Shown: piece by piece, positions 40,158 to 51,244 of the stretch
Layout: every line of letters begins with the position of its first letter
Numbering within the stretch: position 1 is the first letter of the stretch
IMG/VR virus record: IMGVR_UViG_3300027759_000045
Span: 62,001 to 126,000 of that record
DNA: 64,000 nt
Reading direction: 5' to 3' (one strand)
Translations under genes and position numbers: made by a program
Notes under the pieces: generated by a model
What the model was told of the DNA's origin: nothing
Databases searched by the model: none
Seen by the model: only the letters and a program-made list of their open reading frames with translations

Positions 40158-40186
40158 TTGACATTGTATAAATAAACCTATACAAT
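40158..40186 (+). promoter_or_regulatory. sigma70 promoter with nested TATAAATA, heading the RNA-gene region
   Basis: TTGACA-N17-TACAAT; TATAAATA at 40167-74. Confidence 0.85.
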
Positions 40187-40234
40187 ACACACATGCGCTG
40201 ATAAAAAGGTGTATGTAAATTTAGAGAAACAAAA

Positions 40235-40375
40235 ATGCAAACAAACGTATTACATTCTATATCAAATTGTTCAGCCAAACAGGCCGGCTTCGTGCCCTCT
40301 ATTTGGTCGGCAATCAATAGCATGTCATATGATCGCACACCAGAGGGTACCAGGGTCCAGGAGACCATGTTGTAA
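40235..40375 (+). CDS. putative attenuator leader peptide MQTNVLHSISNCSAKQAGFVPSIWSAINSMSYDRTPEGTRVQETML
   Basis: hand-translated 46-codon ORF between the promoter and a terminator; contains all 20 amino acids; last codons carry the antiterminator strand. Confidence 0.65.
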   Translation: MQTNVLHSISNCSAKQAGFVPSIWSAINSMSYDRTPEGTRVQETML

Positions 40376-40400
40376 ATAAAAATTTACACACAAACTCCAA

Positions 40401-40438
40401 GGACCCTAGGATTAAAAACCCTAGGGTTTTTTGTTTTT
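40401..40438 (+). terminator. intrinsic terminator (attenuator)
   Basis: ACCCTAGG(40403-10)/CCTAGGGT(40420-27) stem, then TTTTTGTTTTT. Confidence 0.85.
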
Positions 40439-40450
40439 AGAAAAGGAAAA

Positions 40451-40612
40451 ATGAAGAAATTAGATTTAGAAAAACGAATGCGTGAAGTAAAGTACACAAC
40501 AGAGCACACGCTGACTCCGGAACAACGTGAAAAGTTGATTCGGGAAAAGTTGGAACGTGCCAGATTGATGCGTGAAACTCGTACGCGAGTCGAAAATCAA
40601 CTTTGGGCATAG
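40451..40612 (+). CDS. charged helical protein, 53 aa (MKKLDLEKRMREVK...NQLWA)
   Basis: AAGGA RBS; first ORF after the terminator. Confidence 0.65.
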   Translation: MKKLDLEKRMREVKYTTEHTLTPEQREKLIREKLERARLMRETRTRVENQLWA

Positions 40613-40714
40613 ATCCTAAAGTGTTGACAGGAAACGAGGTCCTGTGCTACACTATAAACAAGCACAAACGGGCGGCGACTAGGATGGAATCCCTTTTGTG
40701 GGACTAAAAATTAG
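40613..40714 (+). ncRNA. candidate structured RNA (may instead or also be a promoter)
   Basis: ATCCTA/TAGGAT, AGTGT/ACACT, ACAGGA/TCCTGT, GTGCT/AGCAC, TCCC/GGGA; also TTGACA-N18-TACACT at 40624-53. Confidence 0.4.
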
Positions 40715-40804: not shown

Positions 40805-40879
40805 GCACAGGTGGCGGAATGATTACGCAACGGATTGCAAATCCGTATCATGCAGGTTTGAGTCCTGTCCTGTGTTCCA
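40805..40879 (+). tRNA. tRNA-Cys(GCA)
   Basis: cloverleaf; ACGGA-TTGCAAA-TCCGT; U73; encoded CCA. Confidence 0.92.
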
Positions 40880-40898
40880 ATTTTTACAAAGTAAAGAT

Positions 40899-41660
40899 AT
40901 GAAATTATTTGCCACTGTGTTTTTTTGTGCAGTTTTATCCAATGTGTCAGCTCGCACCAGTGAGCCCACAGTGTTGGTCTACAACATTAATGCACAGCGC
41001 ACAGAACAGAGTCAACACGCCGATCAAGTCAGATCTATGGCCAGTGTGACCAAATTGATGACTGCTATGGTTGCATTGGATCACAACAGAAATCTACAAC
41101 AGACGGTGATGCTGGGGAAACACACCGGTAGTCGATTGCCGCCTGGTCTATACACTAGAGAACAGTTGTTGCTGGCCATGCTGGTCAGCAGTGACAACGG
41201 TGCAGCCGAGGCCATTGCACAGGACTATCCCGGAGGTCGATCTGCGTTTGTGGCTGAGATGAATCGACATGCTAAAATGTGGAATCTTGGAGATACTAAG
41301 TTTGTAGATCCTTCGGGTCTGGGTGTGTTCAATGTGTCCACTGCGCAGGACCTGGCAGAGATGGTACAGATTGCTGCCAGCTATTGGTTTATACAAGAAG
41401 CCAGCGGGCAGTCTACTGTACAATTGAAAAAGCCGGATCGAACTCGTGGCAACACTGTGAATCTTATTCACACATCCCGTCAACTGTTAGCAGAATTTGA
41501 CCGTGTGGTTGTGAGCAAGACTGGATTTACCAATCCCGCCGGTTGGTGTGTGGCCATGCTGGTGGAACGGAACAAACAACAGTATGTGGTCATTGTGTTG
41601 GGTGCCAGTACTAAACTGGATCGCAGTGAGATTATAAAGAAAGCGTTTAAAAATTTGTGA
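40899..41660 (+). CDS. peptidase S11 (D-Ala-D-Ala carboxy/endopeptidase, PbpG-like), secreted
   Basis: signal peptide; SxxK (ASVTK), SDN, KTG; start moved past tRNA-Cys. Confidence 0.9.
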   Translation: MKLFATVFFCAVLSNVSARTSEPTVLVYNINAQRTEQSQHADQVRSMASVTKLMTAMVALDHNRNLQQTVMLGKHTGSRLPPGLYTREQLLLAMLVSSDNGAAEAIAQDYPGGRSAFVAEMNRHAKMWNLGDTKFVDPSGLGVFNVSTAQDLAEMVQIAASYWFIQEASGQSTVQLKKPDRTRGNTVNLIHTSRQLLAEFDRVVVSKTGFTNPAGWCVAMLVERNKQQYVVIVLGASTKLDRSEIIKKAFKNL

Positions 41661-41693
41661 TACTAGCACTGTATTACATTCAAAGGAGTGGCC

Positions 41694-42293
41694 ATGTCAA
41701 AAGTATTTTATCTCAACTTACCTCAACTTCCAGACAAAATTTATAATAAATTAGTCGAAATTTGTTATTCAACTGTGCTAAATGAACAATCTCGTCTTTG
41801 GACACATGATTTTCATCGTGGCGAGTTGGTGGTTGCCACAATCGATGGTGGAATAGTTGTACCAGATGATTTGTTGGTAAAAGAGTTAGACCTACTTTAC
41901 AAAGATTATTTTCCCGGCCAAGAACTTCTTTTCACTACTTCTAGAATCAGCAATGTGGTTGGACAAAAAAGTATATTGCCACCGCACTGTGATCGCAAAA
42001 GAAAACTGGCCATCAACTATGTTTTAAAAACTGGTGGGTCACAAGTTTCGACTTGTTTTTACAAAGAACGTAGATCTACTCCAACACTCGACACTGCTGA
42101 GAATAGATATTACAAGGATCTCACTGTTGACTTTCTTGAGGTAATTCCTGAAAAAACTTGGCACTGTTTTGATGTTCAAACTTTTCACAGTGTCAACGAT
42201 ATAGAGACAGATAGATTTTTCTTTTCAATAATTTTAAAAACAACCAACCCTTCAATAGAAGAATTTTCTTTGAAGTACAAGAATTTAATGTAG
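41694..42293 (+). CDS. 2OG-Fe(II) oxygenase-like protein
   Basis: LPPHCD...FHSV....R. Confidence 0.6.
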   Translation: MSKVFYLNLPQLPDKIYNKLVEICYSTVLNEQSRLWTHDFHRGELVVATIDGGIVVPDDLLVKELDLLYKDYFPGQELLFTTSRISNVVGQKSILPPHCDRKRKLAINYVLKTGGSQVSTCFYKERRSTPTLDTAENRYYKDLTVDFLEVIPEKTWHCFDVQTFHSVNDIETDRFFFSIILKTTNPSIEEFSLKYKNLM

Positions 42294-42322
42294 GTGTGGG
42301 TCGAGTCCTGTCACCTATTCCA
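42291..42322 (+). pseudogene. tRNA 3'-half remnant / minihelix ending TCCA
   Basis: TAGGTG/CACCTA stem, GGGTCGAGTCC T-loop-like sequence, CCA. Confidence 0.45.
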
Positions 42323-42328
42323 ATTTCA

Positions 42329-42420
42329 GGAAGATGATGCAGCGGGGTTGGTCCTGCGACTGGCCTTGAAAACCAGGTTCTCTTAACAGGGATGGGGTTC
42401 GACTCCTCCGTCTTCCGCCA
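42329..42420 (+). tRNA. tRNA-Ser(TGA), 8/4 fold
   Basis: 8-bp acceptor GGAAGATG/CGTCTTCC, 4-bp T stem, long variable arm, G73, loop CTTGAAA. Confidence 0.85.
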
Positions 42421-42424
42421 ACAA

Positions 42425-42514
42425 GGTGTGGTCCTATAATGGTATTAGAGCAGATTGCTAATCTGTCGCTCGGCGTAATCCGAGTTCTGAGTTCGAGTCT
42501 CAGTCACACCGCCA
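42425..42514 (+). tRNA. tRNA-Ser(GCT)
   Basis: GCAGA-TTGCTAA-TCTGT, long variable arm, G73. Confidence 0.92.
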
Positions 42515-42519
42515 ACATT

Positions 42520-42595
42520 GCCGACGTAGCTCATCAGGTAGAGCACCAGACTGAAAATCTGGGTGTGACTGGTTCGAGTCCAGTCGTTGGTACCA
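42520..42595 (+). tRNA. tRNA-Phe(GAA)
   Basis: CCAGA-CTGAAAA-TCTGG. Confidence 0.93.
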
Positions 42596-42599
42596 ATCT

Positions 42600-42674
42600 G
42601 GGTCTTTGGTGAAATGGATATCATGCTTGGCTTCGAACCAAGTGGTGTGGGTTCGATTCCTGCAGGACCCGCCA
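42600..42674 (+). tRNA. tRNA-Arg(TCG)
   Basis: CTTGG-CTTCGAA-CCAAG. Confidence 0.92.
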
Positions 42675-42678
42675 ACAC

Positions 42679-42752
42679 AGCCCGTTAGCTCAATGGTAGA
42701 GCACTCGACTGATAATCGAGCGACAGAGGATCGTTACCTCTACAGGCTACCA
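42679..42752 (+). tRNA. tRNA-Ile(GAT), non-canonical T loop
   Basis: CTCGA-CTGATAA-TCGAG; T arm AGAGG-ATCGTTA-CCTCT. Confidence 0.88.
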
Positions 42753-42775
42753 ACAATTTTTACAGAGTAGAATTA

Positions 42776-43318
42776 ATGAAAGATTTAATATTAATCGCAT
42801 TGAAAGAAGAAGCACCCAACATAGCTTTCAGTATGAAAGTTTTTTTCACTGGGGTAGGAAAAGTAAATGCCGCAATGACTACAGCTGAAATGATTGCTAA
42901 GTACCGCCCCGATCGTATTATCAACTTTGGTACAGCTGGTGGAGTCACTGTTAAGTCAGGATTTCACCAAGTGACCAAGTTTATACAACGTGACATGATG
43001 TGCTGTGAGTTGGGTAGTCTGCCAGGTCAAACACCATTCGAAGATGGTGTTGTTTTAGATTTTGGCAAGGGGTTGACCTGCAGTACAGGTGATAACTTTG
43101 TTACTGATAGTAATCTATTGATACCAGCCGACGTAGTGGATATGGAAGCATACGCTATAGCAAAGGCATGTAAAAAACATAACGTAGAATTTTTATGTTA
43201 CAAGTTTGTTAGTGATGGTGCTAATGAAGATTCATTAAATGATTGGCGCACAACTGTTAGTCAAGGGCAACTTCACTATCTAAATAAACTTAAAGAATTA
43301 AATGTATCTCTGGTGTAA
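42776..43318 (+). CDS. mtnN: 5'-methylthioadenosine/SAH nucleosidase
   Basis: ALKEE, TGVGKVNAA, NFGTAGG, STGDNF, VDMEAYAIAKAC, KFVSD. Confidence 0.9.
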   Translation: MKDLILIALKEEAPNIAFSMKVFFTGVGKVNAAMTTAEMIAKYRPDRIINFGTAGGVTVKSGFHQVTKFIQRDMMCCELGSLPGQTPFEDGVVLDFGKGLTCSTGDNFVTDSNLLIPADVVDMEAYAIAKACKKHNVEFLCYKFVSDGANEDSLNDWRTTVSQGQLHYLNKLKELNVSLV

Positions 43319-43377
43319 TGGCAGCACCGCGGTCTCCAAAACCGTCAGTCAAGGTTCGAGTCCTTGGAGGTACGCCA
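43304..43377 (+). tRNA. tRNA-Trp(CCA)
   Basis: GCGGT-CTCCAAA-ACCGT; 5' end overlaps the mtnN stop. Confidence 0.9.
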
Positions 43378-43382
43378 GTTTA

Positions 43383-43456
43383 GCTCTTATAGTATAATGG
43401 CATTACATGCCCTTGGTAAGGGTAAAACACAAGTTCAATTCTTGTTAAGAGCACCA
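43383..43456 (+). tRNA. tRNA-Thr(GGT)
   Basis: TGCCC-TTGGTAA-GGGTA. Confidence 0.88.
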
Positions 43457-43460
43457 AATA

Positions 43461-43579
43461 ACCCTACAGTGAGCAGGGTATACTAAAGTACTAAGTTGAC
43501 CATTTAATGCCGTTTTGCTATAATAGAAACAAGTTAAGAAATTAGCTGGATCTGCAAATAACCCTACACAGTGTAGGGT
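43461..43579. repeat. two 19-bp palindromic sites 100 bp apart
   Basis: ACCCTACAGTGAGCAGGGT (43461-79) and perfect ACCCTACAC-A-GTGTAGGGT (43561-79), both preceded by AAATA. Confidence 0.75.
43496..43524 (+). promoter_or_regulatory. sigma70 promoter (first of tandem pair)
   Basis: TTGACC-N17-TATAAT. Confidence 0.85.
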
Positions 43580-43593
43580 GTTTGCAAAACAAA

Positions 43594-43622
43594 TTGACTA
43601 GATATAGCCATTGTGTTATACT
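43594..43622 (+). promoter_or_regulatory. sigma70 promoter (second of tandem pair)
   Basis: TTGACT-N17-TATACT. Confidence 0.8.
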
Positions 43623-43627
43623 AGAGA

Positions 43628-43661
43628 CTAGTTAGGAAATTAACTAGACGTTCTTTAAAAA
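43628..43661 (+). promoter_or_regulatory. boxB-like hairpin plus boxA-like antitermination signal
   Basis: CTAGTTA-GGAAAT-TAACTAG then CGTTCTTTAAAAA. Confidence 0.6.
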
Positions 43662-43691
43662 GTTATTGTTTTTGGTAACCCGCAAGGGTTG

Positions 43692-43906
43692 CTATTTTAA
43701 AATGTATTAAAGGTTACCTACACCGTTAGGGATCTAAGGCGAGGACAGTGGGGCCGCCCACGCTCAAGCTAGGTCTATGAAACCGGGCAGAAATGTCCAG
43801 AAAAGCGGCGGAGCATGTAGGCAGTAATGACCGTGCAGGCCTATAGCAGACGGTGCTATAGGTAGACATAGATGCACAATGGTTCCTTTAGTATGTTTTA
43901 AAATAG
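43692..43906 (+). ncRNA. unidentified ~215-nt multibranched RNA
   Basis: 22-bp closing stem with three G-U pairs and at least five internal helices. Confidence 0.65.
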
Positions 43907-43913
43907 TAGAATT

Positions 43914-43989
43914 TGGTCTGTTCGTATAGAGGTTATTACTGTGGATTGTCTATCCACTTACGGGGGTTCGATTCCCCCACAGACCGCCA
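43914..43989 (+). tRNA. tRNA-Asp(GTC)
   Basis: GTGGA-TTGTCTA-TCCAC; G73. Confidence 0.92.
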
Positions 43990-43995
43990 AGTTTT

Positions 43996-44060
43996 GAGAG
44001 TCACATCGCCTGGACACTTCCTTTGGTAACGAAGCACTAGGTCCTGCAACCGTGGCTCTC
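43996..44060 (+). ncRNA. 65-nt rod-like structured element
   Basis: GAGAGTCAC/GTGGCTCTC, CCTGG/CTAGG, CTTC/GAAG nested. Confidence 0.4.
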
Positions 44061-44068
44061 CCCTTTTT

Positions 44069-44143
44069 GCTCGATTCGTCTATCGGTTAGGACATCTGGT
44101 TTTCATCCAGGCAAGAGCGGTTCGATTCCGCTATCGAGTACCA
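44069..44143 (+). tRNA. tRNA-Glu(TTC)
   Basis: TCTGG-TTTTCAT-CCAGG. Confidence 0.92.
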
Positions 44144-44144
44144 A

Positions 44145-44343
44145 ATCCCGTTACTATTTTCGTTAAAATAGCGTTTGATTAGCGATAGAGATCCGGTGGC
44201 AGAAGACCGTAAGTGTAGGGCTGGAAACTACCCCTCGGAATCTGATAGGCAGTATCCTTCTGCACACAGACATTAGAATAAAAAGGATGGACAGAGTAAC
44301 CGCTCAATTAAGGGCTGGCATGGAAACCAGTAGCTTATCCTAA
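44145..44343 (+). ncRNA. unidentified structured RNA domain A
   Basis: no ORF; CTATTTT/AAAATAG, GCAGAAG/CTTCTGC, CTGG/CCAG, GGAT/ATCC. Confidence 0.55.
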
Positions 44344-44346
44344 CAT

Positions 44347-44431
44347 GGAGATGCCGCCGTAATGGTATGGCAGGAGACTGTAAATCTTCCGACTTCGGTC
44401 ACAACAGGTTCGATCCCTGTCATCTCCACCA
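44347..44431 (+). tRNA. tRNA-Tyr(GTA)
   Basis: GGAGA-CTGTAAA-TCTTC, long variable arm. Confidence 0.92.
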
Positions 44432-44432
44432 G

Positions 44433-44630
44433 AACCCGCCGGGGTAACGCCTGGCTAGTATGACCCGTACGAGAGAAGTGAGTTCGTTACTCAAGGGTGG
44501 TAGTCTTCTTACCAAAAGGCCGCTGGCAATGCGATAACGGTTCCTGTCGGGAAGCGGGTGGAAGGTACGAGTGAGGGGTATGATAGCGTCATATCTTTCT
44601 GTACTATAATTACCGCCGGGGGATGCAGAG
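44433..44630 (+). ncRNA. unidentified pseudoknotted RNA domain B
   Basis: GC-rich non-coding stretch, at least five hairpins, and a long-range GGTGGTAGT(44496-504)/ATTACCGCC(44609-17) pairing. Confidence 0.6.
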
Positions 44631-44635
44631 CATTT

Positions 44636-44711
44636 GGGGGATTGGTATACTTGGCTAACACACCTGGTTTGCAACCAGGAGCAAACGGTTCGAATCCGTT
44701 ATCCTCCACCA
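44636..44711 (+). tRNA. tRNA-Ala(TGC)
   Basis: CCTGG-TTTGCAA-CCAGG; G3-U70. Confidence 0.92.
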
Positions 44712-44730
44712 TTTTATAAAAGGAAATTGT

Positions 44731-44874
44731 ATGAAACGTAAACCGATCGTGCGCGAACGTAACTGCTTCGTTCGTCTGGCACTGTTCCGCAAAGCAGGTG
44801 CGCATCGCAAGAGCAACAAGGCTCTGCGTCGAGCACAAAAACAAAGCCCATTAGGGGGTGAAACTTTAAGGTGA
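44731..44874 (+). CDS. small very basic protein, 47 aa (MKRKPIVRERN...FRKAGAHRKSNKALRR...)
   Basis: AAGGA RBS; 3' end overlaps tRNA-Lys. Confidence 0.55.
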   Translation: MKRKPIVRERNCFVRLALFRKAGAHRKSNKALRRAQKQSPLGGETLR

Positions 44875-44927
44875 AGTAACGGACTTTTAATCCGTAAAAC
44901 AGGGATCGTTCCCCTGCACCCCTACCA
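44854..44927 (+). tRNA. tRNA-Lys(TTT), non-canonical T loop
   Basis: ACGGA-CTTTTAA-TCCGT; T arm CAGGG-ATCGTTC-CCCTG. Confidence 0.87.
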
Positions 44928-45020
44928 TATAAAAGCACTCTAAACTGGACGCAGGTTCTGTGAAGTAACACCTCGGATTGATCGCCGAGAAGGTATGGAG
45001 AATAAGAGTGTTTCTATATG
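44926..45020 (+). other. long stem (15/16 bp) enclosing ~63 nt
   Basis: CATATAAAAGCACTCT / AGAGTGTTTCTATATG. Confidence 0.55.
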
Positions 45021-45048
45021 GTAAGAATACCAGTCAATAAATAATGTT

Positions 45049-45783
45049 ATGAAAATTAAACTACCTCAAGAATTGCACTGGTTCTGCCCAGTGGCAGCAC
45101 CTGACCTAATTAGATTAGGTGGAAAAATGGATGGTGGCTACATTGTGCCACGTTCAGCAGTGGAACAAGCACAGGGCCTGCTGAGTTTTGGACTGGGTGA
45201 CGATTTTACATTTGACCAAGACTGGCATGATCTCAAGCCCCAGGATCCAATTCAGATGTATGACGCCAGTGTTACCAGAGATACCATGCGTATCAGCATC
45301 AATACGCCGGTTCGCGGACATCTGGACATTCGAACCATGTACGATGAATTCTTTCAGGGCAATGTAAAACATTGGCCAGAGTTTATTGGTCCTGAGAACT
45401 TTGTTCGAGCCCTGGACAGAATGGGCGTGGATCAAGTGTTTATTAAAATGGATATCGAAGGTGGCGAATACAGTTTGATTGAAAGTATTTTACAACATCG
45501 AGATCGTATCGTGGGTGTCGCAATGGAATGGCATAACTGTGCAAATCGTAGCGAGCAATGGCGCCGAGCTGTGCAACGCTGGCAAGAGCACTATGCTATA
45601 GTACATGTACACGGAAATAACCATGTGGGATTTGATTCAGATGGTGTGTTTGGATGTATGGAACTGACACACATTCGCCGAGACTTGGTTCCTGGAAATG
45701 AACTGCGTAAAGAGTCTTACATACACGGTTTAGATTATTCTAACGTGGCTGGTCTTACTGATATTGAATACTATTTTGATTAA
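45049..45783 (+). CDS. FkbM-like methyltransferase
   Basis: LIRLGGKMDGGY, LSFGLGDD, FIKMDIEGGEY, HVHGNN. Confidence 0.75.
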   Translation: MKIKLPQELHWFCPVAAPDLIRLGGKMDGGYIVPRSAVEQAQGLLSFGLGDDFTFDQDWHDLKPQDPIQMYDASVTRDTMRISINTPVRGHLDIRTMYDEFFQGNVKHWPEFIGPENFVRALDRMGVDQVFIKMDIEGGEYSLIESILQHRDRIVGVAMEWHNCANRSEQWRRAVQRWQEHYAIVHVHGNNHVGFDSDGVFGCMELTHIRRDLVPGNELRKESYIHGLDYSNVAGLTDIEYYFD

Positions 45784-45786
45784 TTT

Positions 45787-45862
45787 GGTGATGTAGCTTA
45801 GACGGTAGAGCAATTGCTTCATACGCATTAGGTCGGTGGTTCGATACCACCCATCACCACCA
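45787..45862 (+). tRNA. tRNA(CAT), elongator Met or Ile2
   Basis: loop TTCATAC; paired 1:72, so not initiator; identity unresolved. Confidence 0.8.
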
Positions 45863-45872
45863 AACAAATAAT

Positions 45873-45948
45873 GCGGCTGTAGCTCAGTTGGTAGAGTACT
45901 TGCTTGCCAAGCAAGACGTCACCGGTTCGAACCCGGTTAGCCGCTCCA
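45873..45948 (+). tRNA. tRNA-Gly(GCC)
   Basis: CTTGC-TTGCCAA-GCAAG; U73. Confidence 0.94.
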
Positions 45949-45959
45949 ACATTTATTAC

Positions 45960-46033
45960 TGGGGGTTAGTGTAGCGGTAACACTACAGACTTTGACTCTG
46001 TCATCACTGGTTCGATCCCAGTACCCTCTGCCA
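45960..46033 (+). tRNA. tRNA-Gln(TTG)
   Basis: ACAGA-CTTTGAC-TCTGT; unpaired 1:72, G73. Confidence 0.92.
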
Positions 46034-46057
46034 TCTCTGCCCTTATCTTGGGTGGTA

Positions 46058-46867
46058 TCAAAGATTCTGTTGGGTTGATCCAATAATAATGCTGTTGGGT
46101 TGATCCAACAGCAGATCAACAACCAAATGCACACGTTGGGTTGTTCCTTGATTTTGAACTTGATGCCACGTTAAATTGTTAAGTCTGTACAGCCAACCTA
46201 AAGACATGTGTTCTTGACTGTCAGATTTTCCAGTAAAAGTTACTTGACGGTTGGTTTGCAGTGGTATGTGAAATCTACAATAGTGTTCAAAATAACGACC
46301 TCCGTCGATATGTAGCAGAACACTACCACCTGGCTGCATGCAGTTTAAAACACTGGTACCAATGGCCTTGGCATTCATTTTTTGTTGTGTCCAGTGTAAA
46401 AGTTTAGTCACACCGGGCAGTCGCACTTGCCATTCAGTGTCTACTGAGTCAAGATTTTTGTAATAATCCTTCAACTCAGTTATATTATCATTCGATGCGT
46501 GAGTGCGCAGAAAAATTGATTGGGTTTTATTTACAAAATTCTGTTGGACTGGTGAAGTAGTGTCAGTGACACTATCATGATGTTTAGCTAGGTAAGTTTG
46601 GATATATAAATCTGGTTGTGTCTGCGCCCAATCTATGTTGTCTATTTCGGCTATAGCCGCATTCAGTATAGATTCGGGTACCTGGCTGATTGCATGCGCT
46701 AACAACGGTGGGCGGGCAGCCTGCTTGAAACTGCCTGGTACATAACTATGCACGGTCTCGCATTCCTGACGTATGAAATCAGGTAGAAGTGGATAAGAAT
46801 CTTCGGTGGCACAGTCAGGCCATGCAGGATCTCTTACTGCTTGATAAAATTGATGCCAGTCATTCAT
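46058..46867 (-). CDS. Asp/Asn beta-hydroxylase-like 2OG-Fe(II) oxygenase
   Basis: PGGSVLLHIDGG...RFHIPL...WHQVQNQG...RVHLVVD; TAAATA upstream. Confidence 0.8.
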   Translation of the reverse strand: MNDWHQFYQAVRDPAWPDCATEDSYPLLPDFIRQECETVHSYVPGSFKQAARPPLLAHAISQVPESILNAAIAEIDNIDWAQTQPDLYIQTYLAKHHDSVTDTTSPVQQNFVNKTQSIFLRTHASNDNITELKDYYKNLDSVDTEWQVRLPGVTKLLHWTQQKMNAKAIGTSVLNCMQPGGSVLLHIDGGRYFEHYCRFHIPLQTNRQVTFTGKSDSQEHMSLGWLYRLNNLTWHQVQNQGTTQRVHLVVDLLLDQPNSIIIGSTQQNL

Positions 46868-46892
46868 GATCTGATATTTACCAATTAATGTT

Positions 46893-46968
46893 AGGGGACA
46901 TAAATTAACGGCCAACGCAACTGGCTTTTGCCCAGTAAATCAGAGTTCAATTTTTGTACCCTCTGCTA
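46893..46968 (+). pseudogene. degenerate tRNA, Gln-like body
   Basis: ACTGG-CTTTTGC-CCAGT arm; 3' GTACCCTCTGCTA nearly identical to the tRNA-Gln end; broken D and T arms, no CCA. Confidence 0.6.
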
Positions 46969-46970
46969 TT

Positions 46971-47045
46971 CTCGCTTTAGTATAATGGATAATACAAAGA
47001 GCTTCTACCTCTTGAATGTGGGTTCGATTCCTGCAAGCGAGACCA
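46971..47045 (+). tRNA. tRNA-Arg(TCT)
   Basis: AAGAG-CTTCTAC-CTCTT. Confidence 0.92.
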
Positions 47046-47050
47046 AACAT

Positions 47051-47126
47051 GGAGTTGTTAGTGTAAAGGTCAACACCACGGATTGTGATTCCGTTAATAC
47101 GGGTTCGATTCCCGTACGACTCCCCA
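47051..47126 (+). tRNA. tRNA-His(GTG)
   Basis: ACGGA-TTGTGAT-TCCGT; encoded G-1:C73. Confidence 0.92.
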
Positions 47127-47130
47127 AACG

Positions 47131-47319
47131 TTATTGATAATCTTCTTTAAAAGACTTGATCCAACTGACCGCAGAGTCATGATCACTAAAGTAACGCATA
47201 ATTAGCCGATCATTGAAAATATCATTGACAAAAATGTAAGATGTGTTATACTCACTAAGTGACAGGTGCACTTGCAAATGTCCACTGGTTGAAATAAAAT
47301 CTTGTGTTTGCGTCTGCAT
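47131..47319 (-). CDS. hypothetical protein, 62 aa
   Basis: minus-strand TATAAATA 5 nt before the ATG. Confidence 0.6.
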   Translation of the reverse strand: MQTQTQDFISTSGHLQVHLSLSEYNTSYIFVNDIFNDRLIMRYFSDHDSAVSWIKSFKEDYQ

Positions 47320-47376
47320 GCACATATTTATACCTCAATCCTGTACCAATAAATACCCCACACAACAAGGAAACAA

Positions 47377-47532
47377 ATGAAAACCACATCAGCATTTAAA
47401 CTCAGCAAAAGAACAAAAACATTATTGGCATTGCTAAAGTTTAGAGATCAACATGATCGTAATGGATTTAAAAGAGCCATGGTTGACGCACAAGCAACCC
47501 CAGTGGCATTTTCGCCCAAAGACCGCAAGTAA
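47377..47532 (+). CDS. small basic protein, 51 aa (MKTTSAFKLSKRTK...KDRK)
   Basis: TAAATA plus AAGGA RBS. Confidence 0.65.
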   Translation: MKTTSAFKLSKRTKTLLALLKFRDQHDRNGFKRAMVDAQATPVAFSPKDRK

Positions 47533-47538
47533 GATTAT

Positions 47539-47614
47539 TCCCCAATAGCTCAGTCGGTAGAGTAGCAGACTGTTAATCTGTTGGTCCGTGGTTCGAGCCC
47601 ACGTTGGGGAGCCA
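47539..47614 (+). tRNA. tRNA-Asn(GTT)
   Basis: GCAGA-CTGTTAA-TCTGT. Confidence 0.94.
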
Positions 47615-47621
47615 ATTAAAA

Positions 47622-47706
47622 GGGGATGTGGCGTAATTGGTAGCCGCACTGGATTTAGGTTCCAGCGAGTAAAATCGTGAGAGTTCGAGTCTCTCCATCC
47701 CCACCA
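47622..47706 (+). tRNA. tRNA-Leu(TAG)
   Basis: CTGGA-TTTAGGT-TCCAG, long variable arm. Confidence 0.92.
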
Positions 47707-47718
47707 AGGTAAACTATT

Positions 47719-48219
47719 ATGGAAAAAATCAATCTCGCCAAGGTAAAAAAGTTCATTGAGGCGCAGACACCCGAAACTCGAATTTATCTCGGCTGTGACT
47801 CTGAGCGCCTTAGAGTAAACGGGGTCTGGCATGCCGACTATGTGTTGGCTGTTGTGGTTCACATCAACGGCAACAACGGTTGCAAACTATTTGGCGAAGT
47901 ACAGCGTGAGCGAGACTTTGATCAAAAAACTTCTCGTCCCAGTATGCGATTGATGAATGAAGTTTACAAAGTATCCGAACTGTACCTAAAGCTGGGCGAA
48001 GTGCTAGAAGGCCGTCATGTTGAAGTGCATTTGGATATTAACCCAGATGATCAGTACGGTTCTAGCTGTGTGATATCACAGGCAGTGGGCTATATCAAAG
48101 GCACTTGCAATGTGACACCATCAGTTAAACCCAATGCGTTTGCTGCCAGCTATGCTGCCGATCGTTTTAAAGGATTATCAACTGCATGTCATCGTGCCAG
48201 AATCAACGAAAGATTCTAA
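47719..48219 (+). CDS. RNase H-like YkuK/DUF458 family protein
   Basis: IYLGCDS...RLMNEVYK...EVHLDIN...VKPNAFAASYAAD. Confidence 0.8.
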   Translation: MEKINLAKVKKFIEAQTPETRIYLGCDSERLRVNGVWHADYVLAVVVHINGNNGCKLFGEVQRERDFDQKTSRPSMRLMNEVYKVSELYLKLGEVLEGRHVEVHLDINPDDQYGSSCVISQAVGYIKGTCNVTPSVKPNAFAASYAADRFKGLSTACHRARINERF

Positions 48220-48226
48220 AAAGTTG

Positions 48227-48254
48227 TTGACTTTTAATTTTTTTCTGTTATAAT
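48227..48254 (+). promoter_or_regulatory. sigma70 promoter, extended -10
   Basis: TTGACT-N16-TATAAT with TGn. Confidence 0.75.
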
Positions 48255-48264
48255 TACAACTGTA

Positions 48265-48354
48265 GGAAGCGTGTCCGAGTGGCCGATGGAACTGGTCTAC
48301 TAAACCAGCATACGAGTAATCGTATCGTGAGTTCGAATCTCACCGCTTCCGCCA
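48265..48354 (+). tRNA. tRNA-Ser(ACT), rare A34 anticodon
   Basis: CTGGT-CTACTAA-ACCAG; Ser-type long variable arm and G73. Confidence 0.85.
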
Positions 48355-48360
48355 AGTTAC

Positions 48361-48435
48361 CGCGGGGTACGTCAGTGGTAGACCGCCAGGCTCATAACCT
48401 GGAAGCCGGAGGTTCGAGTCCTTCCCCCGCAACCA
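48361..48435 (+). tRNA. initiator tRNA-fMet(CAT)
   Basis: C1:A72 mismatch, CGCGGGG acceptor, loop CTCATAA. Confidence 0.88.
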
Positions 48436-48453
48436 TTTGTTTTAGGAAGCATT

Positions 48454-48840
48454 ATGAACTCTAATCCTGAGCGCAAGAACAATTTAGAATACGACTTGCG
48501 GAATACCAAGTGGATCTGCGACAAGGCCAAGGCCAGCGAATTTTACGCACAAAATCTGTATGCTGCCATGTGCAATCAAGACTGGCAAAAAAATGAAGTT
48601 TGGCCGTTGCTCAAAAGCGAAACATACAGTTGCAGTTGGCGCTATGCCGGTGGCATTGTGGCCGACATGGTCGAAAAGGGTGACTATATCGATTGGTACT
48701 GCTCAGGTATTCGTGGAGAACAAGGCATCGATTACGAGCCTCCTCTAACTTTTGTGCCCGAAGGTACAGTCACAGAAGAAATACGCGAAGACTTTTTTAA
48801 ATTAGGATGGATTCCTATTGATCAAGTAGACGATGAATAA
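48454..48840 (+). CDS. hypothetical protein, 128 aa
   Basis: ORF with AGGA RBS. Confidence 0.8.
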   Translation: MNSNPERKNNLEYDLRNTKWICDKAKASEFYAQNLYAAMCNQDWQKNEVWPLLKSETYSCSWRYAGGIVADMVEKGDYIDWYCSGIRGEQGIDYEPPLTFVPEGTVTEEIREDFFKLGWIPIDQVDDE

Positions 48841-48849
48841 ATAAGTGTT

Positions 48850-49270
48850 ATTGCTGTATGAAGCAAAGAGAAAAGTGTTCTGGACGGGGGTGCGAATCCC
48901 CCCAGGTCCACCAAAAAGACTTTTACCCTAGACCGCAAGAGCCAACTACATGTTGCGGAAAAGGATGTGAAGGATGTGTCTGGATTAGCTATTTTGAAGC
49001 ACTAGCTAGATGGGAGAGTCTTTTTGGAGGGCCTGACCTAGATTCGACAGGGCAACAAGTAAATTAGTGGACAGCTCGGGAATGTGAAACCCGTAGGGTT
49101 GGGGAGACTCGGCCGAAGAAGCAAAAAACGTAAATGCAAACGTAAACAAAACCGTAACTGTTTCAGGCAAGAATATCAAGTTCTCTGCTCGTTCAGCCAA
49201 GGAAGCATTGGCAGTCTAAACACTGCCTAGGGTTTTTGGTAATTTATCCTCGTAACAGAATTAAATTACC
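48850..49270 (+). ncRNA. ssrA: circularly permuted two-piece tmRNA
   Basis: acceptor piece first (T arm GGGGG-TGCGAAT-CCCCC, CAGGTCC-A-CCA ending 48913); coding piece from GGGCCTGAC..ATTCGAC at 49029 with G3-U70; tag ANVNKTVTVSGKNIKFSARSAKEALAV at 49136-49219; 5' end approximate. Confidence 0.9.
48858..49067 (+). CDS. Oxidored-like (CC..GC..CVW..Y) small protein nested in the tmRNA gene
   Basis: PRPQEPTTCCGKGCEGCVWISYFEALARWE encoded in the tmRNA spacer. Confidence 0.5.
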   Translation: MKQREKCSGRGCESPQVHQKDFYPRPQEPTTCCGKGCEGCVWISYFEALARWESLFGGPDLDSTGQQVN

Positions 49271-49275
49271 TTTTT
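49238..49275 (+). terminator. hairpin plus U-tract at the tmRNA 3' end
   Basis: GGTAATTTA/TAAATTACC then TTTTT. Confidence 0.6.
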
Positions 49276-49299
49276 ATTCAATAACAAAAATCCACCGGC

Positions 49300-50589
49300 A
49301 TGAACATTCCCTTAGACAATTTGTACCACTGGGTGCAATCGATCATACCTGTTCCTGCAGTAATCTATAGATTTTATCCACACGGTAGTAAAAATATTGT
49401 TGATCTTACTTCACTGAGTCCCCGACCCGATGAGGAACATTATGTTGATATTCCAGTTGTTGTCCACGACCAGGAACCATTGGATTATAATCTGTACACA
49501 AATATTGATCTGGCATCATTGCAGCAATTGTGGCAAACCATGGCGTTAAGCAATCCTGTTGCCACAGAAATAAGATGCCAGGCCTTAGTTGATAAAAATT
49601 TATTGGCAATACCATTAGCAGGTGGATCGCTTCATGACCAGGCAATTTTACTGCATTCTGAAAAAAATTCTGTTGACTTAGAACAGTATTCTCAAAATAA
49701 TTTTTTGCCGGTTTACCATTGGTGTCATGCAATTATTGCTCGTGACTGGTATAGATTTGCTGAAATAGATGCTCGGCTTGTTCCACAATCTCATATACAA
49801 GAAAAATTCCTTATATATAATCGCGCATGGGGCAATACCAGAGAATACAGATTAAAGTTCATGGAGTTATTGATTAAACATGGATTACATGAATCAAGTA
49901 AAACCAGTATATCAGCCAGAGCCGAAGGCAATCAAGGACATCATTATCATGATCATAAATTTAAAAATGTCAATTTTGCGCTTGAAGACAGCACTGTATT
50001 AGATCTGCTCGAAGATAATCAATTCAACAGCAACGAAAGCGCACAGTACAATCATGATGATTTCAATTCAACTGCAATAAGTGTAGTTTTAGAAACCATG
50101 TTTGACGACTCAAGAATTCACTTGACAGAAAAGACACTGAGACCAATTGCCTGCGGTCATCCATTTGTATTGGCAGCGGGGCCACGCAGTTTAGAGTATC
50201 TTAGAAGTTACGGATTTCGAACATTTGCTCCATGGATTGACGAAAGTTATGATCATGAACCTGACAGTTTGCGCAGACTTGAAAAAATTATCAACAGCAT
50301 GAATAAAATTAATTTGCTTGATGCCGAGGAGTTTGATCAATTTCTAATAGAAATCAAACACATAGCCGATTTTAACAAAAAACATTTTTTCAGCGATGCA
50401 TTTCAACAACAGGTGATTGAAGAATTAAAAACTAATTTAACACATGCAATTCAACACATTAAAAAACCACGTGGCATATTTCCAAGAGCATTGAAAAAAA
50501 AAATATTAAAAGCAGATCCCAGTTTCTTTGATACAAAATGTCATTATGACTATTATTGCGAAGTGATTCGGTTGCTGAGATCTCAATGA
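49300..50589 (+). CDS. GT10-like protein (paralogue)
   Basis: VVLETMF....IHLTEKTLRPIACGHPFVLAAG...GFRTF...IDESYD. Confidence 0.5.
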   Translation: MNIPLDNLYHWVQSIIPVPAVIYRFYPHGSKNIVDLTSLSPRPDEEHYVDIPVVVHDQEPLDYNLYTNIDLASLQQLWQTMALSNPVATEIRCQALVDKNLLAIPLAGGSLHDQAILLHSEKNSVDLEQYSQNNFLPVYHWCHAIIARDWYRFAEIDARLVPQSHIQEKFLIYNRAWGNTREYRLKFMELLIKHGLHESSKTSISARAEGNQGHHYHDHKFKNVNFALEDSTVLDLLEDNQFNSNESAQYNHDDFNSTAISVVLETMFDDSRIHLTEKTLRPIACGHPFVLAAGPRSLEYLRSYGFRTFAPWIDESYDHEPDSLRRLEKIINSMNKINLLDAEEFDQFLIEIKHIADFNKKHFFSDAFQQQVIEELKTNLTHAIQHIKKPRGIFPRALKKKILKADPSFFDTKCHYDYYCEVIRLLRSQ

Positions 50590-50701
50590 GTACACCCCAC
50601 CTTTTTGGTGTGTTTCTTCATTGAAAAAGCCGGGGATCATGTACCGTGACTAAGTATTATTCTAGCCGATGAAAGTCGGCTTTAATTTAAAGGAAAATAA
50701 A

Positions 50702-51244
50702 ATGAAAAAAATCTTCGCAATTTTGGCTTTGGCCGTTTCTAGTTCTGCTTTCGCAGTATCATATGTTTCAGTTGACGTTGACAGCGTTTCTGGACTCAAG
50801 GGCGCTGGCGACAGTACAGCACAATACATTCGTGCTGGTAAAGAAATTGGCGGAATCCAATTTGGTTTGCAAGGCCGTACTGCTACATTGAACAACAACT
50901 CAGGTATGTTGAGTAGCGTAGAAGTCACAGCGGGAAAGAATTCCAAAGGCATTACACCATTCATTGGTGCAGGTCATGACAATGGAGTCAATGCAGGCAC
51001 ACCTTACAACTACGGGTTGGTTGGTGCAACATATGGTCTGCCAGCTGGCCCAGGTTACTTGTTAACAGGTGTCAAGACTCGTGTTGGTTCAACAGAAAAT
51101 GGCGCACGTACAAAGCAGACAGTTGGCTTTGCTACATACTCAATTCCAGTTACCAAGGGCGTTGCTGTTAACTTGAATGCTAGCCGTTCTGGTCAAGACA
51201 TCAAAGAAAAGGCGTTTGGCGTAGGTTTAGGTTTTAGTTTTTAA
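50702..51244 (+). CDS. outer-membrane beta-barrel protein
   Basis: signal peptide MKKIFAILALAVSSSAFA, amphipathic strands, C-terminal GLGFSF. Confidence 0.75.
   Translation: MKKIFAILALAVSSSAFAVSYVSVDVDSVSGLKGAGDSTAQYIRAGKEIGGIQFGLQGRTATLNNNSGMLSSVEVTAGKNSKGITPFIGAGHDNGVNAGTPYNYGLVGATYGLPAGPGYLLTGVKTRVGSTENGARTKQTVGFATYSIPVTKGVAVNLNASRSGQDIKEKAFGVGLGFSF

What the first reader, a model, noticed from the sequence alone, without database searches (positions are those of the whole stretch)
40158..40440. Candidate 'all-amino-acid' transcription attenuator heading the phage tRNA region
Seen: a promoter (40158-86), then a 46-codon ORF (40235-375) MQTNVLHSISNCSAKQAGFVPSIWSAINSMSYDRTPEGTRVQETML. All 20 amino acids occur by codon 37, and H, C, K, F, W, Y and D occur once each. 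Synonymous codons are widely sampled: all three Ile codons, UCN and AGC Ser, CAA/CAG, CGC/AGG, TTA/TTG. Codons 39-43 (CCAGGGTCC-A-GGAG, 40350-63) are complementary to CTCC-AA-GGACCCTAGG (40395-410). That segment is also the 5' arm of a strong terminator (ACCCTAGG/CCTAGGGT + U-tract), so the two helices exclude each other. TGTAAATTT (40214-22) and AAATTTACA (40380-88) can also enclose the whole leader. Known: trp/his/leu attenuators use this geometry but with runs of one amino acid. Inference: a ribosome stalled at any codon leaves the antiterminator strand free and allows read-through. The phage could thus sense starvation or host anticodon-nuclease cleavage of any tRNA and respond by expressing its full tRNA set. 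A rough hand estimate puts all-20 coverage by chance at a few percent or less; I did not compute it rigorously. Caveat: further promoters lie downstream (possibly 40624, and 43496, 43594, 48227, 53870), so control may be partial.
Basis: partly seen in the sequence, partly recalled or inferred. Interest (0 to 1): 0.95.

Follow-up and report, generated by a model that had tools for sequence, protein, structure and literature searches.

The report
Phage leader peptide sensing all tRNAs
A short gene at the head of a giant phage's tRNA cluster, conserved in many related uncultured phages, almost always encodes all 20 amino acids and is wired to a transcription stop signal like a classical attenuator, so it probably lets the phage detect a shortage of any charged tRNA.

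Summary
On its own, all-20 coverage in the window ORF is not significant: the chance is about 4% for 46 codons, and 3 of 142 ORFs of similar size in the window show it.

Comparison with relatives changes the picture. The same module recurs in uncultured freshwater phage contigs: sigma-70-type promoter, 34-51 codon ORF, GC hairpin plus T-run, a ~50-aa ORF 12-25 nt further on, then tRNA arrays.
- The peptides have no invariant column except Met1, yet 42 of 57 unique versions contain all 20 amino acids.
- In an independent profile search, 99 of 130 cluster representatives do too (5.8 expected).
- Rare residues change position between lineages, and counts per residue are under-dispersed.
- The ORFs cover more tRNA decoding classes than synonymous resampling gives.
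- The terminator stem covaries.
- In all 68 variants, the terminator's 5' arm pairs in the nascent RNA with the last 4-31 nt of the ORF, in a helix stronger than the terminator.

This is the geometry of ribosome-mediated attenuation, with a leader that samples the whole tRNA pool. I found no description of it in the literature. Translation, termination and response to tRNA shortage are untested, and the window has a second promoter before its first tRNA.

The parts
40158..40186 (+). Sigma-70-type promoter of the leader transcript (TTGACA, 17-nt spacer, TACAAT); transcription start expected near 40193.
   Evidence: 11 of 12 matches. Conserved in all relatives.
40166..40175 (+). GTATAAATAA motif in the promoter spacer. 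It may be an overlapping phage-specific promoter of the T4-late TATAAATA type.
   Evidence: Invariant block in alignment A2. Present in the spacer of nearly all family members, often with a second copy upstream. Its function is not tested.
40193..40214 (+). 5' UTR hairpin, found in the window's clade only. Most relatives are leaderless, with the -10 hexamer ending 6-10 nt before the ATG.
   Evidence: Minimum-energy fold. One-sided changes keep the pairing. Leaderless relatives are shown.
40235..40375 (+). Leader ORF, 46 codons plus TAA. It contains all 20 amino acids and 28 of 32 tRNA decoding classes.
   Evidence: Open in all 57 unique homologues, while the other two frames carry stops in all 12 other cluster representatives.
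40274..40307 (+). Mid-ORF hairpin (codons 14-25), a candidate RNA polymerase pause or 'region 1' structure. This role is inferred.
   Evidence: -11.1 kcal/mol, z = -2.0. A hairpin at the same relative place occurs in all 13 clusters, with z from -0.6 to -3.5.
40339..40348 (+). ACCAGAGGGU (Thr-Pro-Glu-Gly codons), which can pair with the terminator's 3' arm when the antiterminator is formed.
   Evidence: Minimum-energy fold of 40330-40429. Lies within the strongly conserved GATCGCACACCAGAG block. Its role is inferred.
40350..40363 (+). 5' strand of the antiterminator (codons 39-43, CCAGGGTCCAGGAG).
   Evidence: Pairs with 40395-40410 in the minimum-energy folds. The equivalent strand lies 4-31 nt before the stop codon in all 68 variants.
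40371..40388 (+). Apical hairpin of the antiterminator stem-loop; it contains the stop codon TAA (40373-75).
   Evidence: The stop codon lies between the two antiterminator strands in all family members.
40395..40410 (+). 3' strand of the antiterminator (CTCCAAGGACCCTAGG). Positions 40401-10 are also the terminator's 5' arm.
   Evidence: Each ORF tail pairs better with its own terminator arm than with arms from other clusters: -21.5 against -16.2 kcal/mol.
40401..40439 (+). Intrinsic terminator: stem 40401-10 / 40420-29, 9-nt loop ATTAAAAAC, then TTTTTTGTTTTT.
   Evidence: -14.2 kcal/mol. Across the family, 98.8% of cells are paired and 5 of 10 pairs show compensatory changes.
40451..40612 (+). 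53-aa ORF starting 21 nt after the terminator stem, with an AAGGA ribosome-binding site and no room for a promoter of its own. It is the first product of read-through.
   Evidence: Conserved family with the motif EHxLTxEQxxKLIxxKLERARLM; matches phrog_20536. Predicted as a two-helix hairpin, pLDDT 86. Function unknown.
40624..40653 (+). Second sigma-70-type promoter (TTGACA, 18-nt spacer, TACACT, with TG) between the 53-aa ORF and tRNA-Cys.
40805..54353 (+). tRNA region: 26 tRNA genes covering all 20 amino acids, plus a permuted tmRNA, interspersed with protein genes. tRNA-Cys at 40805-40879 is the first.

Best explanation
This is a ribosome-mediated transcription attenuator. Its leader peptide has evolved to contain every amino acid, and most tRNA decoding classes, about once each. 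It therefore reports the decoding capacity of the infected cell as a whole.

Proposed mechanism:
1. Host RNA polymerase starts at the sigma-70-type promoter. In most relatives the transcript begins at or next to the AUG. In the window's clade there is a 42-nt A-rich 5' UTR.
2. A ribosome translates the 34-51 codon ORF close behind the polymerase. A mid-ORF hairpin may pause the polymerase so that the two stay in step.
3. If the ribosome reaches the last codons and the stop codon, it sits on the 5' strand and apex of the antiterminator stem-loop. The terminator hairpin then forms and the transcript ends.
4. If the ribosome is held up at any earlier codon because the matching charged tRNA is scarce, or if translation fails altogether, the stronger antiterminator forms first. 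The polymerase then reads through into the ~50-aa ORF and the tRNA genes behind it.

What is shown: the sequence anatomy, its conservation, the covariation, and selection for complete amino-acid and codon-class coverage.

What is inferred: that the ORF is translated, that the hairpin terminates transcription, the direction of the switch, the pausing role of the mid-ORF hairpin, the physiological trigger (starvation, host tRNA loss or tRNA-cleaving defences), and how much of the tRNA array depends on read-through.
For: Family and architecture:
- Loci came from the flanking 382-aa gene and from the ~50-aa downstream protein.
- In the loci where the module was found, the stop codon lies 21-31 nt before an 8-10 bp GC hairpin plus T-run. 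The next ATG follows 12-25 nt later, 46-50 nt in two loci.
- tRNA arrays follow on the same strand in almost all loci. Where a tRNA was in reach, about half have no strong promoter in between.

Coverage:
- 42 of 57 unique leaders carry all 20 residues.
- 7-8 of 13 clusters do, against 0.4 expected, P = 1e-8 to 6e-11. Excluding the discovery cluster gives P = 1.7e-7.
- A nucleotide-shuffle null gives P = 1.2e-10.
- Independent profile search: 99 of 130 against 5.8 expected.
- No peptide column is invariant except M1.
- Cys occupies 38 different positions relative to Trp. Counts per residue have variance far below the mean.
- D33N is accompanied by N28D in L033, with L027 carrying both Asp.

Codon level: 354 decoding classes are covered, against 329 under synonymous resampling (0 of 5000 reach it) and 286 for random ORFs.

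RNA:
- Terminator 98.8% paired, with 5 covarying pairs.
- In 68 of 68 variants the nascent RNA pairs 7-10 nt of the terminator's 5' arm upstream, beginning 4-24 nt before the stop codon and mostly within its last 31 nt.
- The cognate antiterminator duplex averages -21.5 kcal/mol against -16.2 for non-cognate pairs, z = -4.2 against shuffles. The terminator hairpins are weaker, -12.6 to -19.
- In the window: -25.7 against -14.2 kcal/mol.
- Modelled terminator probability in the window is 0.016 with no ribosome, about 0 with a ribosome on codons 15-36, and about 0.5 on codons 38 to stop.

Position: residues needed for full coverage lie ahead of the antiterminator strand, permutation P = 1.5e-4.

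Conservation: the region is more conserved than the neighbouring genes.
Against: - There are no expression, ribosome-footprint or termination data, and no cultured phage carries the module.
- The window's clade has no Shine-Dalgarno sequence before the leader ORF.
- About a quarter of family members lack 1-3 residues, mostly Cys.
- The last residue to appear, usually Glu in the DRTPE motif, lies a median of 7 nt before the antiterminator strand. With a strict 12-nt ribosome margin, only 16-20 residues fall in the sensing zone.
- The equilibrium ribosome-mask model gives a clean switch in 8 of 13 representatives only.
- Column-wise covariation of the antiterminator is weak, because the alignment shifts register and the CCC core never varies.
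- The terminator loop is 9 nt, longer than in typical strong terminators.
- A further promoter precedes the first tRNA in the window and in about half of the loci where a tRNA was in reach.
- The ~50-aa protein also occurs without a leader in some phages.
Confidence: 0.7

Rival explanations
1. The element is a general sensor of translation failure. It responds to any slowing or loss of ribosomes on the leader, for example from host shut-off, ribosome-targeting toxins or loss of elongation factors, rather than to individual tRNAs. Full amino-acid coverage would then be a secondary refinement.
For: With no ribosome, the antiterminator is the favoured fold, so read-through is the default state. 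Leaderless starts couple the ORF closely to transcription. Known uORFs such as toiL sense several kinds of ribosome inhibition (PMC12121999).
Against: A pure coupling sensor needs no particular composition. Yet coverage of all 20 residues and of decoding classes is strongly selected. This rival overlaps with the best explanation rather than replacing it.
Confidence: 0.15
2. The ORF encodes a small functional protein, and the hairpin is just its ordinary terminator. The pairing between the ORF's end and the terminator arm is incidental, or serves mRNA stability.
For: The ORF is conserved, with a semi-conserved Trp and Asp-Arg. It has its own promoter and terminator.
Against: - No column is invariant apart from Met1, and peptide identity between clusters is 9-30%.
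- Selection acts on the presence of residues, not their position, and on synonymous codon classes.
- The conserved ~50-aa ORF begins 12-25 nt after the terminator and has no promoter of its own, so read-through must happen.
- The antiterminator co-varies with the terminator arm.
- The leader matches no Pfam or PHROG family.
Confidence: 0.07
3. The transcript is a non-coding small RNA of about 240 nt, and the open frame is a by-product of RNA constraints.
For: The region is conserved at all codon positions among close relatives, more than the flanking genes. It folds well, z = -4.1. The window's clade has no Shine-Dalgarno sequence.
Against: - No Rfam family matches.
- The frame stays open through extensive sequence change, while the other two frames close.
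- RNA constraints cannot explain amino-acid completeness.
- Most members start with AUG or AUGAUG at the predicted 5' end.
Confidence: 0.03
4. The switch works in the opposite direction: a ribosome that finishes the leader prevents termination, so downstream genes are expressed only when translation is healthy.
For: Ribosomes closely following the polymerase can suppress intrinsic terminators in some systems. This rests on general knowledge and was not tested here.
Against: The stop codon lies 21-31 nt before the terminator's 5' arm. That is beyond the reach of a ribosome sitting at the stop codon. What that ribosome covers is the antiterminator's 5' strand and apex. In the model, terminator probability rises when the ribosome is on the last codons.
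Confidence: 0.05

Closest known systems
Leader-peptide transcription attenuators of amino-acid operons (trpL, hisL, leuL, pheL, thrL, and the multivalent ilvGMEDA / ilvBN leaders)
   Same: A short translated leader ORF, an intrinsic terminator before the regulated genes, and an antiterminator that uses the terminator's 5' arm. The antiterminator's other strand lies where a ribosome finishing the leader covers it. There may also be a pause hairpin inside the leader.
   Different: - The classical leaders carry runs of one to three regulatory amino acids. This one carries about one of each of the 20, with no runs.
- The regulated genes are a ~50-aa protein and tRNA genes of a phage, not biosynthetic enzymes.
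- Without translation, the default here appears to be read-through, because the antiterminator forms in every nascent-RNA fold. In trp, a 1:2 pairing gives termination by default.
- Most members are leaderless.
Polycysteine leaderless short ORFs of mycobacteria that attenuate operon expression in response to cysteine (10.1101/834739)
   Same: The leader ORF begins at the 5' end of the transcript, with no 5' UTR. Its codon content decides what is sensed.
   Different: Those ORFs sense one amino acid through consecutive Cys codons, and they are cellular. Here all residues are present, Cys typically once, and the element belongs to phages.
uORFs and leaders that sense ribosome stalling in general, such as toiL of E. 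coli (PMC12121999) and the antibiotic-responsive attenuators found by Term-seq
   Same: A stalled ribosome at various positions in a short upstream ORF changes RNA folding and switches on the downstream genes. These elements sense translation stress rather than a metabolite.
   Different: Those respond to drugs bound to the ribosome at particular codons or peptide contexts. No selection for complete amino-acid content has been reported for them, as far as my searches show.
T-box riboswitches
   Same: They couple tRNA charging status to read-through of a terminator by way of an antiterminator.
   Different: A T-box binds one specific uncharged tRNA directly and needs no translation. The window has no T-box match, and this element needs a ribosome.

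Membership tests
Ribosome-mediated (leader-peptide) transcription attenuator | A short ORF between the promoter and the regulated genes, conserved as an open frame | tested here: met
   34-51 codons, open in all 57 unique versions. The other two frames carry stops in all 12 other cluster representatives; in the window itself one alternative frame is also open.
Ribosome-mediated (leader-peptide) transcription attenuator | The leader ORF is actually translated | not testable with these tools
   Only indirect signs: selection on amino-acid and codon-class content, and AUG or AUGAUG at the predicted 5' end. There are no footprint or reporter data.
Ribosome-mediated (leader-peptide) transcription attenuator | An intrinsic terminator between the leader and the downstream gene | tested here: met
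   8-10 bp GC stem plus T-run in every locus that has a leader. 98.8% of cells are paired and 5 pairs show compensatory changes. Termination activity itself is not tested.
Ribosome-mediated (leader-peptide) transcription attenuator | An antiterminator that excludes the terminator and has one strand inside or next to the end of the leader ORF | tested here: met
   In 68 of 68 variants the 5' arm pairs with the last 4-31 nt of the ORF. Cognate pairs are stronger than non-cognate pairs, z = -4.2. In the window, -25.7 against -14.2 kcal/mol. Column-wise covariation is weak.
Ribosome-mediated (leader-peptide) transcription attenuator | Clustered regulatory codons for the amino acid(s) sensed | tested here: not met
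   There are no runs. Each residue occurs about once: Cys 1.0, Trp 1.1, Asp 1.1-1.6 and His 1.2-1.4 per peptide, with under-dispersed counts. This is the feature that makes it a variant of the class.
Ribosome-mediated (leader-peptide) transcription attenuator | A pause hairpin that keeps the polymerase and the ribosome in step | tested here: inconclusive
   A mid-ORF hairpin of -10 to -16 kcal/mol is present at codons ~7-28 in all 13 clusters. Individual z scores are only -0.6 to -3.5. Pausing is not testable here.
T-box riboswitch | Match to the T-box covariance model (specifier loop, T-box sequence) | tested here: not met
   No Rfam match in 40150-40450, even at E up to 1.
Known small-protein families (Pfam, PHROGs) | Profile match of the 46-aa product | tested here: not met
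   No Pfam or PHROG family matches.

The most novel reading that the evidence does not exclude
A family of uncultured freshwater phages, the window's 347-kb jumbo phage among them, carries a universal tRNA-pool gauge. It is a roughly 45-codon test message that contains every amino acid and about 27 of 32 decoding classes. Its speed of translation sets, by attenuation, the transcription of a small helical protein and of the phage's own tRNA array. This would be a homeostatic loop and a built-in answer to host defences that deplete or cleave tRNAs: any missing tRNA would raise phage tRNA output.
Probability: 0.5. Interest if true: 0.92.

Novelty: new variant of a known kind. Interest (0 to 1): 0.88.

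Why it matters
Attenuators have been textbook examples for fifty years, but each known one watches one to three amino acids. A leader selected to contain all twenty, and to spread its codons over tRNA decoding classes, would be the first sensor of the whole charged-tRNA pool.

It also bears on why phages carry large tRNA sets and how they are regulated. Recent work ties phage tRNAs to host tRNA loss and to tRNA-cleaving defences (PMC10264068, PMC11464382). A sensor that switches on when any tRNA runs short would make that idea directly testable.

The element is compact, about 280 nt. It uses standard promoter and terminator signals, so it should work in laboratory E. coli or in cell-free systems. 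It could also serve as a reporter of decoding capacity.

Gene callers mostly miss the ORF. A word-indexed search found only two homologues, whereas a profile search found about 130 clusters.

Tried and rejected
- **DNA search against GenBank phages:** a search with 39900-41000 found only tRNA-Cys matches.
- **Protein searches against GenBank phages:** the flanking 382-aa protein, the 53-aa protein and the leader peptide found nothing or only chance hits at E of 7-8. No cultured model phage was identified.
- **Rfam:** no family matches the leader, even at permissive thresholds.
- **L019:** the most distant relative of the flanking gene has neither tRNAs nor a leader nearby.
- **Column-based covariation of the antiterminator:** this gave weak numbers because of register shifts in the alignment. 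I replaced it with a comparison of each ORF tail against its own and other clusters' terminator arms.
- **RNAalifold on 24 full leaders:** it returned only the terminator and a 2-bp helix.
- **Equilibrium ribosome-mask model:** informative for 8 of 13 representatives. For the rest it was flat, probably because it ignores co-transcriptional order.
- **The 53-aa protein:**
  - The profile search against PDB sequences gave only spurious TALE-repeat matches through the LTPEQ motif.
  - NCBIfam gave nothing useful.
  - Foldseek against PDB gave no match.
- **Leader tuned to the phage's own tRNAs:** rejected. In the window, six of the seven Ser codons (UCN) plus CGC, GCC, CCC and GUC have no directly matching phage anticodon. 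Three classes that the phage does supply (CUR, CGR, GGR) are absent from the leader. This is my hand comparison.
- **Missing residues reflecting missing phage tRNAs:** rejected. L045 lacks Glu in its leader but has a tRNA-Glu.
- **A second copy of the module in the window:** none found.
Full report
**1. What is in the window**

The window is part of IMGVR_UViG_3300027759_000045, a 346,856-bp phage contig. Its family-B DNA polymerase is 43-51% identical to those of Rak2/121Q-like jumbo phages, Atu_ph07 and Phosso. From 40805 to 54353 it carries 26 tRNA genes covering all 20 amino acids, plus a permuted tmRNA.

- promoter TTGACA, 17-nt spacer, TACAAT at 40158-86;
- a 46-codon ORF at 40235-40375 that contains all 20 amino acids, the last new one being E37;
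- a strand at 40350-63 that pairs with 40395-410;
- a hairpin 40401-10 / 40420-29 followed by TTTTTTGTTTTT.

The antiterminator stem-loop folds at -25.7 kcal/mol (z = -5.5). The terminator hairpin folds at -14.2 kcal/mol. The two use the same ten bases, 40401-10.

**2. Is the window ORF by itself remarkable? No.**

For peptides of this phage's composition, the chance of all-20 coverage is 1.3% at 40 residues and 3.5-3.8% at 46 residues. This holds both for independently drawn residues and for real protein windows. Three of the 142 ATG-ORFs of 34-51 codons in the window reach it.

**3. Relatives**

The flanking 382-aa gene gave 20 loci. The 53-aa ORF behind the hairpin, and then an alignment of its homologues, gave about 150 more from viral and metagenome collections.

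The leader region is a conservation peak. In the 72%-identity relatives it is 86-93% identical, against 61-78% in the neighbouring gene.

In the loci where the module was found, the layout is the same:
- a sigma-70-type promoter;
- an ORF of 34-51 codons;
- a stop codon 21-31 nt before an 8-10 bp GC hairpin with a T-run;
- the ATG of a ~50-aa ORF 12-25 nt later (46-50 nt in two loci).

A minority of phages have the ~50-aa gene behind a 69-aa membrane protein instead, with no leader. tRNA arrays follow on the same strand in almost all loci. Among loci where a downstream tRNA was in reach, about half show no strong promoter-like site between the small ORF and the first tRNA, which lies 163-1,184 nt (mostly under 600 nt) downstream. 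The rest, including the window (40624-53), have one.

**4. The all-20 property is selected**

The 57 unique leader peptides fall into 13 clusters at about 45% identity. An alignment of 38 of them has no invariant column except Met1 and a mean column identity of 27%. Even so:
- 42 contain all 20 amino acids, 9 contain 19, 5 contain 18 and 1 contains 17.
- Taking one member per cluster, 7-8 of 13 are complete against 0.4 expected (P = 1e-8 to 6e-11).
- Leaving out the discovery cluster and taking the worst member of each other cluster still gives P = 1.7e-7.
- A null drawn from the family's own composition gives P = 7e-9.
- A null made by shuffling each ORF's nucleotides gives P = 1.2e-10. In the 12 other cluster representatives the other two frames carry 1-7 stops; the window's own +1 frame is open.

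As an out-of-sample test, I searched a profile of the peptides against 1.84 billion representative proteins. It returned 135 hits, 130 of them short proteins, each from a different 50%-identity cluster. Of these, 99 have all 20 residues against 5.8 expected.

The composition is not flat, since Ser is 2.3-fold enriched. Instead, counts per residue are under-dispersed. For example, Cys has mean 1.05 and variance 0.29, Trp 1.13 and 0.11, and His 1.21 and 0.18.

Rare residues are not held in place. Cys occupies 38 different positions relative to Trp. One compensated swap is visible among close relatives: L033 has D33N together with N28D, and L027 carries both Asp.

Selection therefore acts on presence, not position. 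A folded micro-protein would not be expected to show this, and an RNA cannot.

**5. Codon level**

I grouped codons into 32 wobble decoding classes. The 13 cluster representatives cover 354 classes in total, about 27 each. Resampling synonymous codons for the same peptides gives 329 (0 of 5000 reach the observed value), and random ORFs give 286. The caveat is that I applied the window's codon usage to all phages.

The window's leader covers 28 of 32 classes. These include Ser UCN, CGC and others for which the phage has no matching anticodon (my comparison). The leader therefore samples the combined host and phage tRNA pool, not the phage set alone.

**6. RNA switch**

- The terminator stem is 98.8% paired across 43 sequences, with compensatory changes in 5 of 10 pairs.
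- In all 68 unique sequences, the minimum-energy fold of the nascent RNA (up to the terminator loop) pairs 7-10 nt of the terminator's 5' arm with upstream sequence. That pairing begins 4-24 nt before the stop codon and lies mostly within the last 31 nt of the ORF.
- The stop codon always lies between the two antiterminator strands, at the apex of that stem-loop.
- Each ORF tail pairs better with its own terminator arm (-21.5 kcal/mol) than with arms from other clusters (-16.2). Only 12.5% of non-cognate pairs are as good, and z = -4.2 against shuffled tails.
- The antiterminator is stronger than the terminator hairpin, which ranges from -12.6 to -19 kcal/mol.
- Column-wise covariation of the antiterminator is weak, because of alignment register shifts and an invariant CCC core.

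I also modelled a ribosome as an unpaired footprint. In the window this gives a terminator probability of 0.016 with no ribosome, about 0 with the ribosome on codons 15-36, and about 0.5 (the ceiling of the strict criterion) on codons 38 to stop. Eight of 13 representatives show such a step; five do not at equilibrium.

Residues needed for full coverage lie upstream of the antiterminator strand more than permutation predicts (P = 1.5e-4). However, the last one, usually Glu in a conserved DRTPE motif, is only a median of 7 nt ahead of the strand.

Every cluster has a hairpin at codons ~7-28, of -10 to -16 kcal/mol. This could be a pause structure, but that is inference.

**7. Initiation**

In most clusters the -10 hexamer ends 6-10 nt before the ATG, and many ORFs begin ATGATG. 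The message is therefore leaderless or nearly so. The window's clade has instead a 42-nt A-rich 5' UTR with a hairpin and no Shine-Dalgarno sequence. A motif, (G)(T)ATAAATAA, sits in the promoter spacer throughout the family. It may be an overlapping phage-specific promoter.

**8. Interpretation**

The anatomy is that of ribosome-mediated attenuation:
- A ribosome that reaches the end of the leader occupies the antiterminator's 5' strand and apex. The terminator then forms.
- A ribosome held up earlier, or absent, leaves the stronger antiterminator to form first. The polymerase then reads into the ~50-aa ORF, which has no promoter of its own, and on towards the tRNA genes.

A ribosome at the stop codon cannot reach the terminator itself, which starts 21-31 nt away. 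The opposite logic is therefore unlikely.

What is new is the leader's content: one of everything. The simplest reason for selection on that content, and on codon classes, is that a stall at any codon is meant to count. That makes the element a gauge of the whole charged-tRNA pool.

The physiological trigger is not known. It could be starvation, loss of host tRNAs during infection, or tRNA-cleaving defences as discussed in PMC10264068 and PMC11464382.

The first regulated product is a two-helix protein (pLDDT 86) with no recognisable relatives of known function.

**9. Comparison with what is known**

The element works like trp/his/leu/ilv attenuators, but it fails their 'run of regulatory codons' criterion. 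It shares the leaderless start with the mycobacterial Cys-responsive short ORFs (10.1101/834739). It shares generality with stalling-sensing uORFs such as toiL (PMC12121999). It is not a T-box.

Four full-text searches found no description of an all-amino-acid leader, or of attenuation control of phage tRNA arrays. That library does not cover all journals.

**10. Weak points**

- Nothing here is experimental.
- No cultured phage has the module.
- A quarter of members are incomplete, mostly lacking Cys.
- Late-appearing residues may be poorly sensed.
- Further promoters dilute control over the tRNAs in about half of the loci, including the window.
- The family statistics treat clusters as independent, which they are not strictly. 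The changing positions of rare residues argue that inheritance alone does not explain the pattern.

**11. Verdict**

The window ORF alone is within chance, but the family shows strong selection for complete amino-acid and broad codon-class coverage, inside a conserved and covarying terminator/antiterminator switch at the head of phage tRNA arrays. The best explanation is a pan-tRNA attenuator (confidence about 0.7). It is a new variant of a known kind, and of high interest.

Noticed in passing
48821-49310 (+): The phage encodes a permuted (two-piece) tmRNA. Rfam RF04321 scores 104.7 bits at 48852-49219. ARAGORN reads the tag peptide as ANVNKTVTVSGKNIKFSARSAKEALAV.
   Followed up: no
42329-42416 (+): A sub-threshold match to the selenocysteine tRNA model (36.6 bits against a 47-bit cut-off, E = 3.6e-4). 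It lies directly before tRNA-Ser at 42425. ARAGORN does not call it.
   Followed up: no
48265-48354 (+): A tRNA called Ser with the unusual anticodon ACT. It may be a mis-read anticodon loop or an odd tRNA.
   Followed up: no
40166-40175; also + strand copies of ATAAATAA starting at 36796, 45037, 48837, 54007: The motif (G)(T)ATAAATAA lies in the spacer of the leader's promoter in nearly all family members, often with a second copy 35-40 nt upstream. It resembles the T4 late promoter TATAAATA and may be a phage-specific promoter overlapping the host-type one.
   Followed up: partly
40330-40345 (GATCGCACACCAGAG): This block is almost invariant (Asp-Arg-Thr-Pro-Glu codons) across several clusters, and GATCG / Asp-Arg recurs in others. 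Part of it can pair with the terminator's 3' arm in the window. The degree of conservation is not fully explained.
   Followed up: partly
40654-40804 (+): The ~145-nt stretch between the second promoter and tRNA-Cys is about 90% conserved in relatives whose flanking genes are 61-78% identical. It contains a long inverted repeat at about 40720-40775. It may be a processed RNA or a 5' leader element of the tRNA transcript.
   Followed up: no
40451-40612 (+) and loci L048-L052, L123-L124, L174-L177: The ~50-aa two-helix protein (phrog_20536-like) is associated with tRNA arrays even in phages that lack the leader, where a 69-aa membrane protein precedes it. Its function is unknown.
   Followed up: partly
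40899-41660, 42776-43318 (+), 46058-46915 (-): Protein genes are interspersed in the tRNA region: a D-Ala-D-Ala carboxypeptidase (Peptidase_S11), a PNP_UDP_1 phosphorylase and an Asp/Arg beta-hydroxylase-like gene. Gene content between the tRNAs differs among close relatives, so the region is mosaic.
   Followed up: no
40209-40379 (+): A 56-codon GTG-started ORF in another frame overlaps the leader and has no stop in the window. The same frame has 1-7 stops in all 12 other cluster representatives, so it is not conserved.
   Followed up: yes
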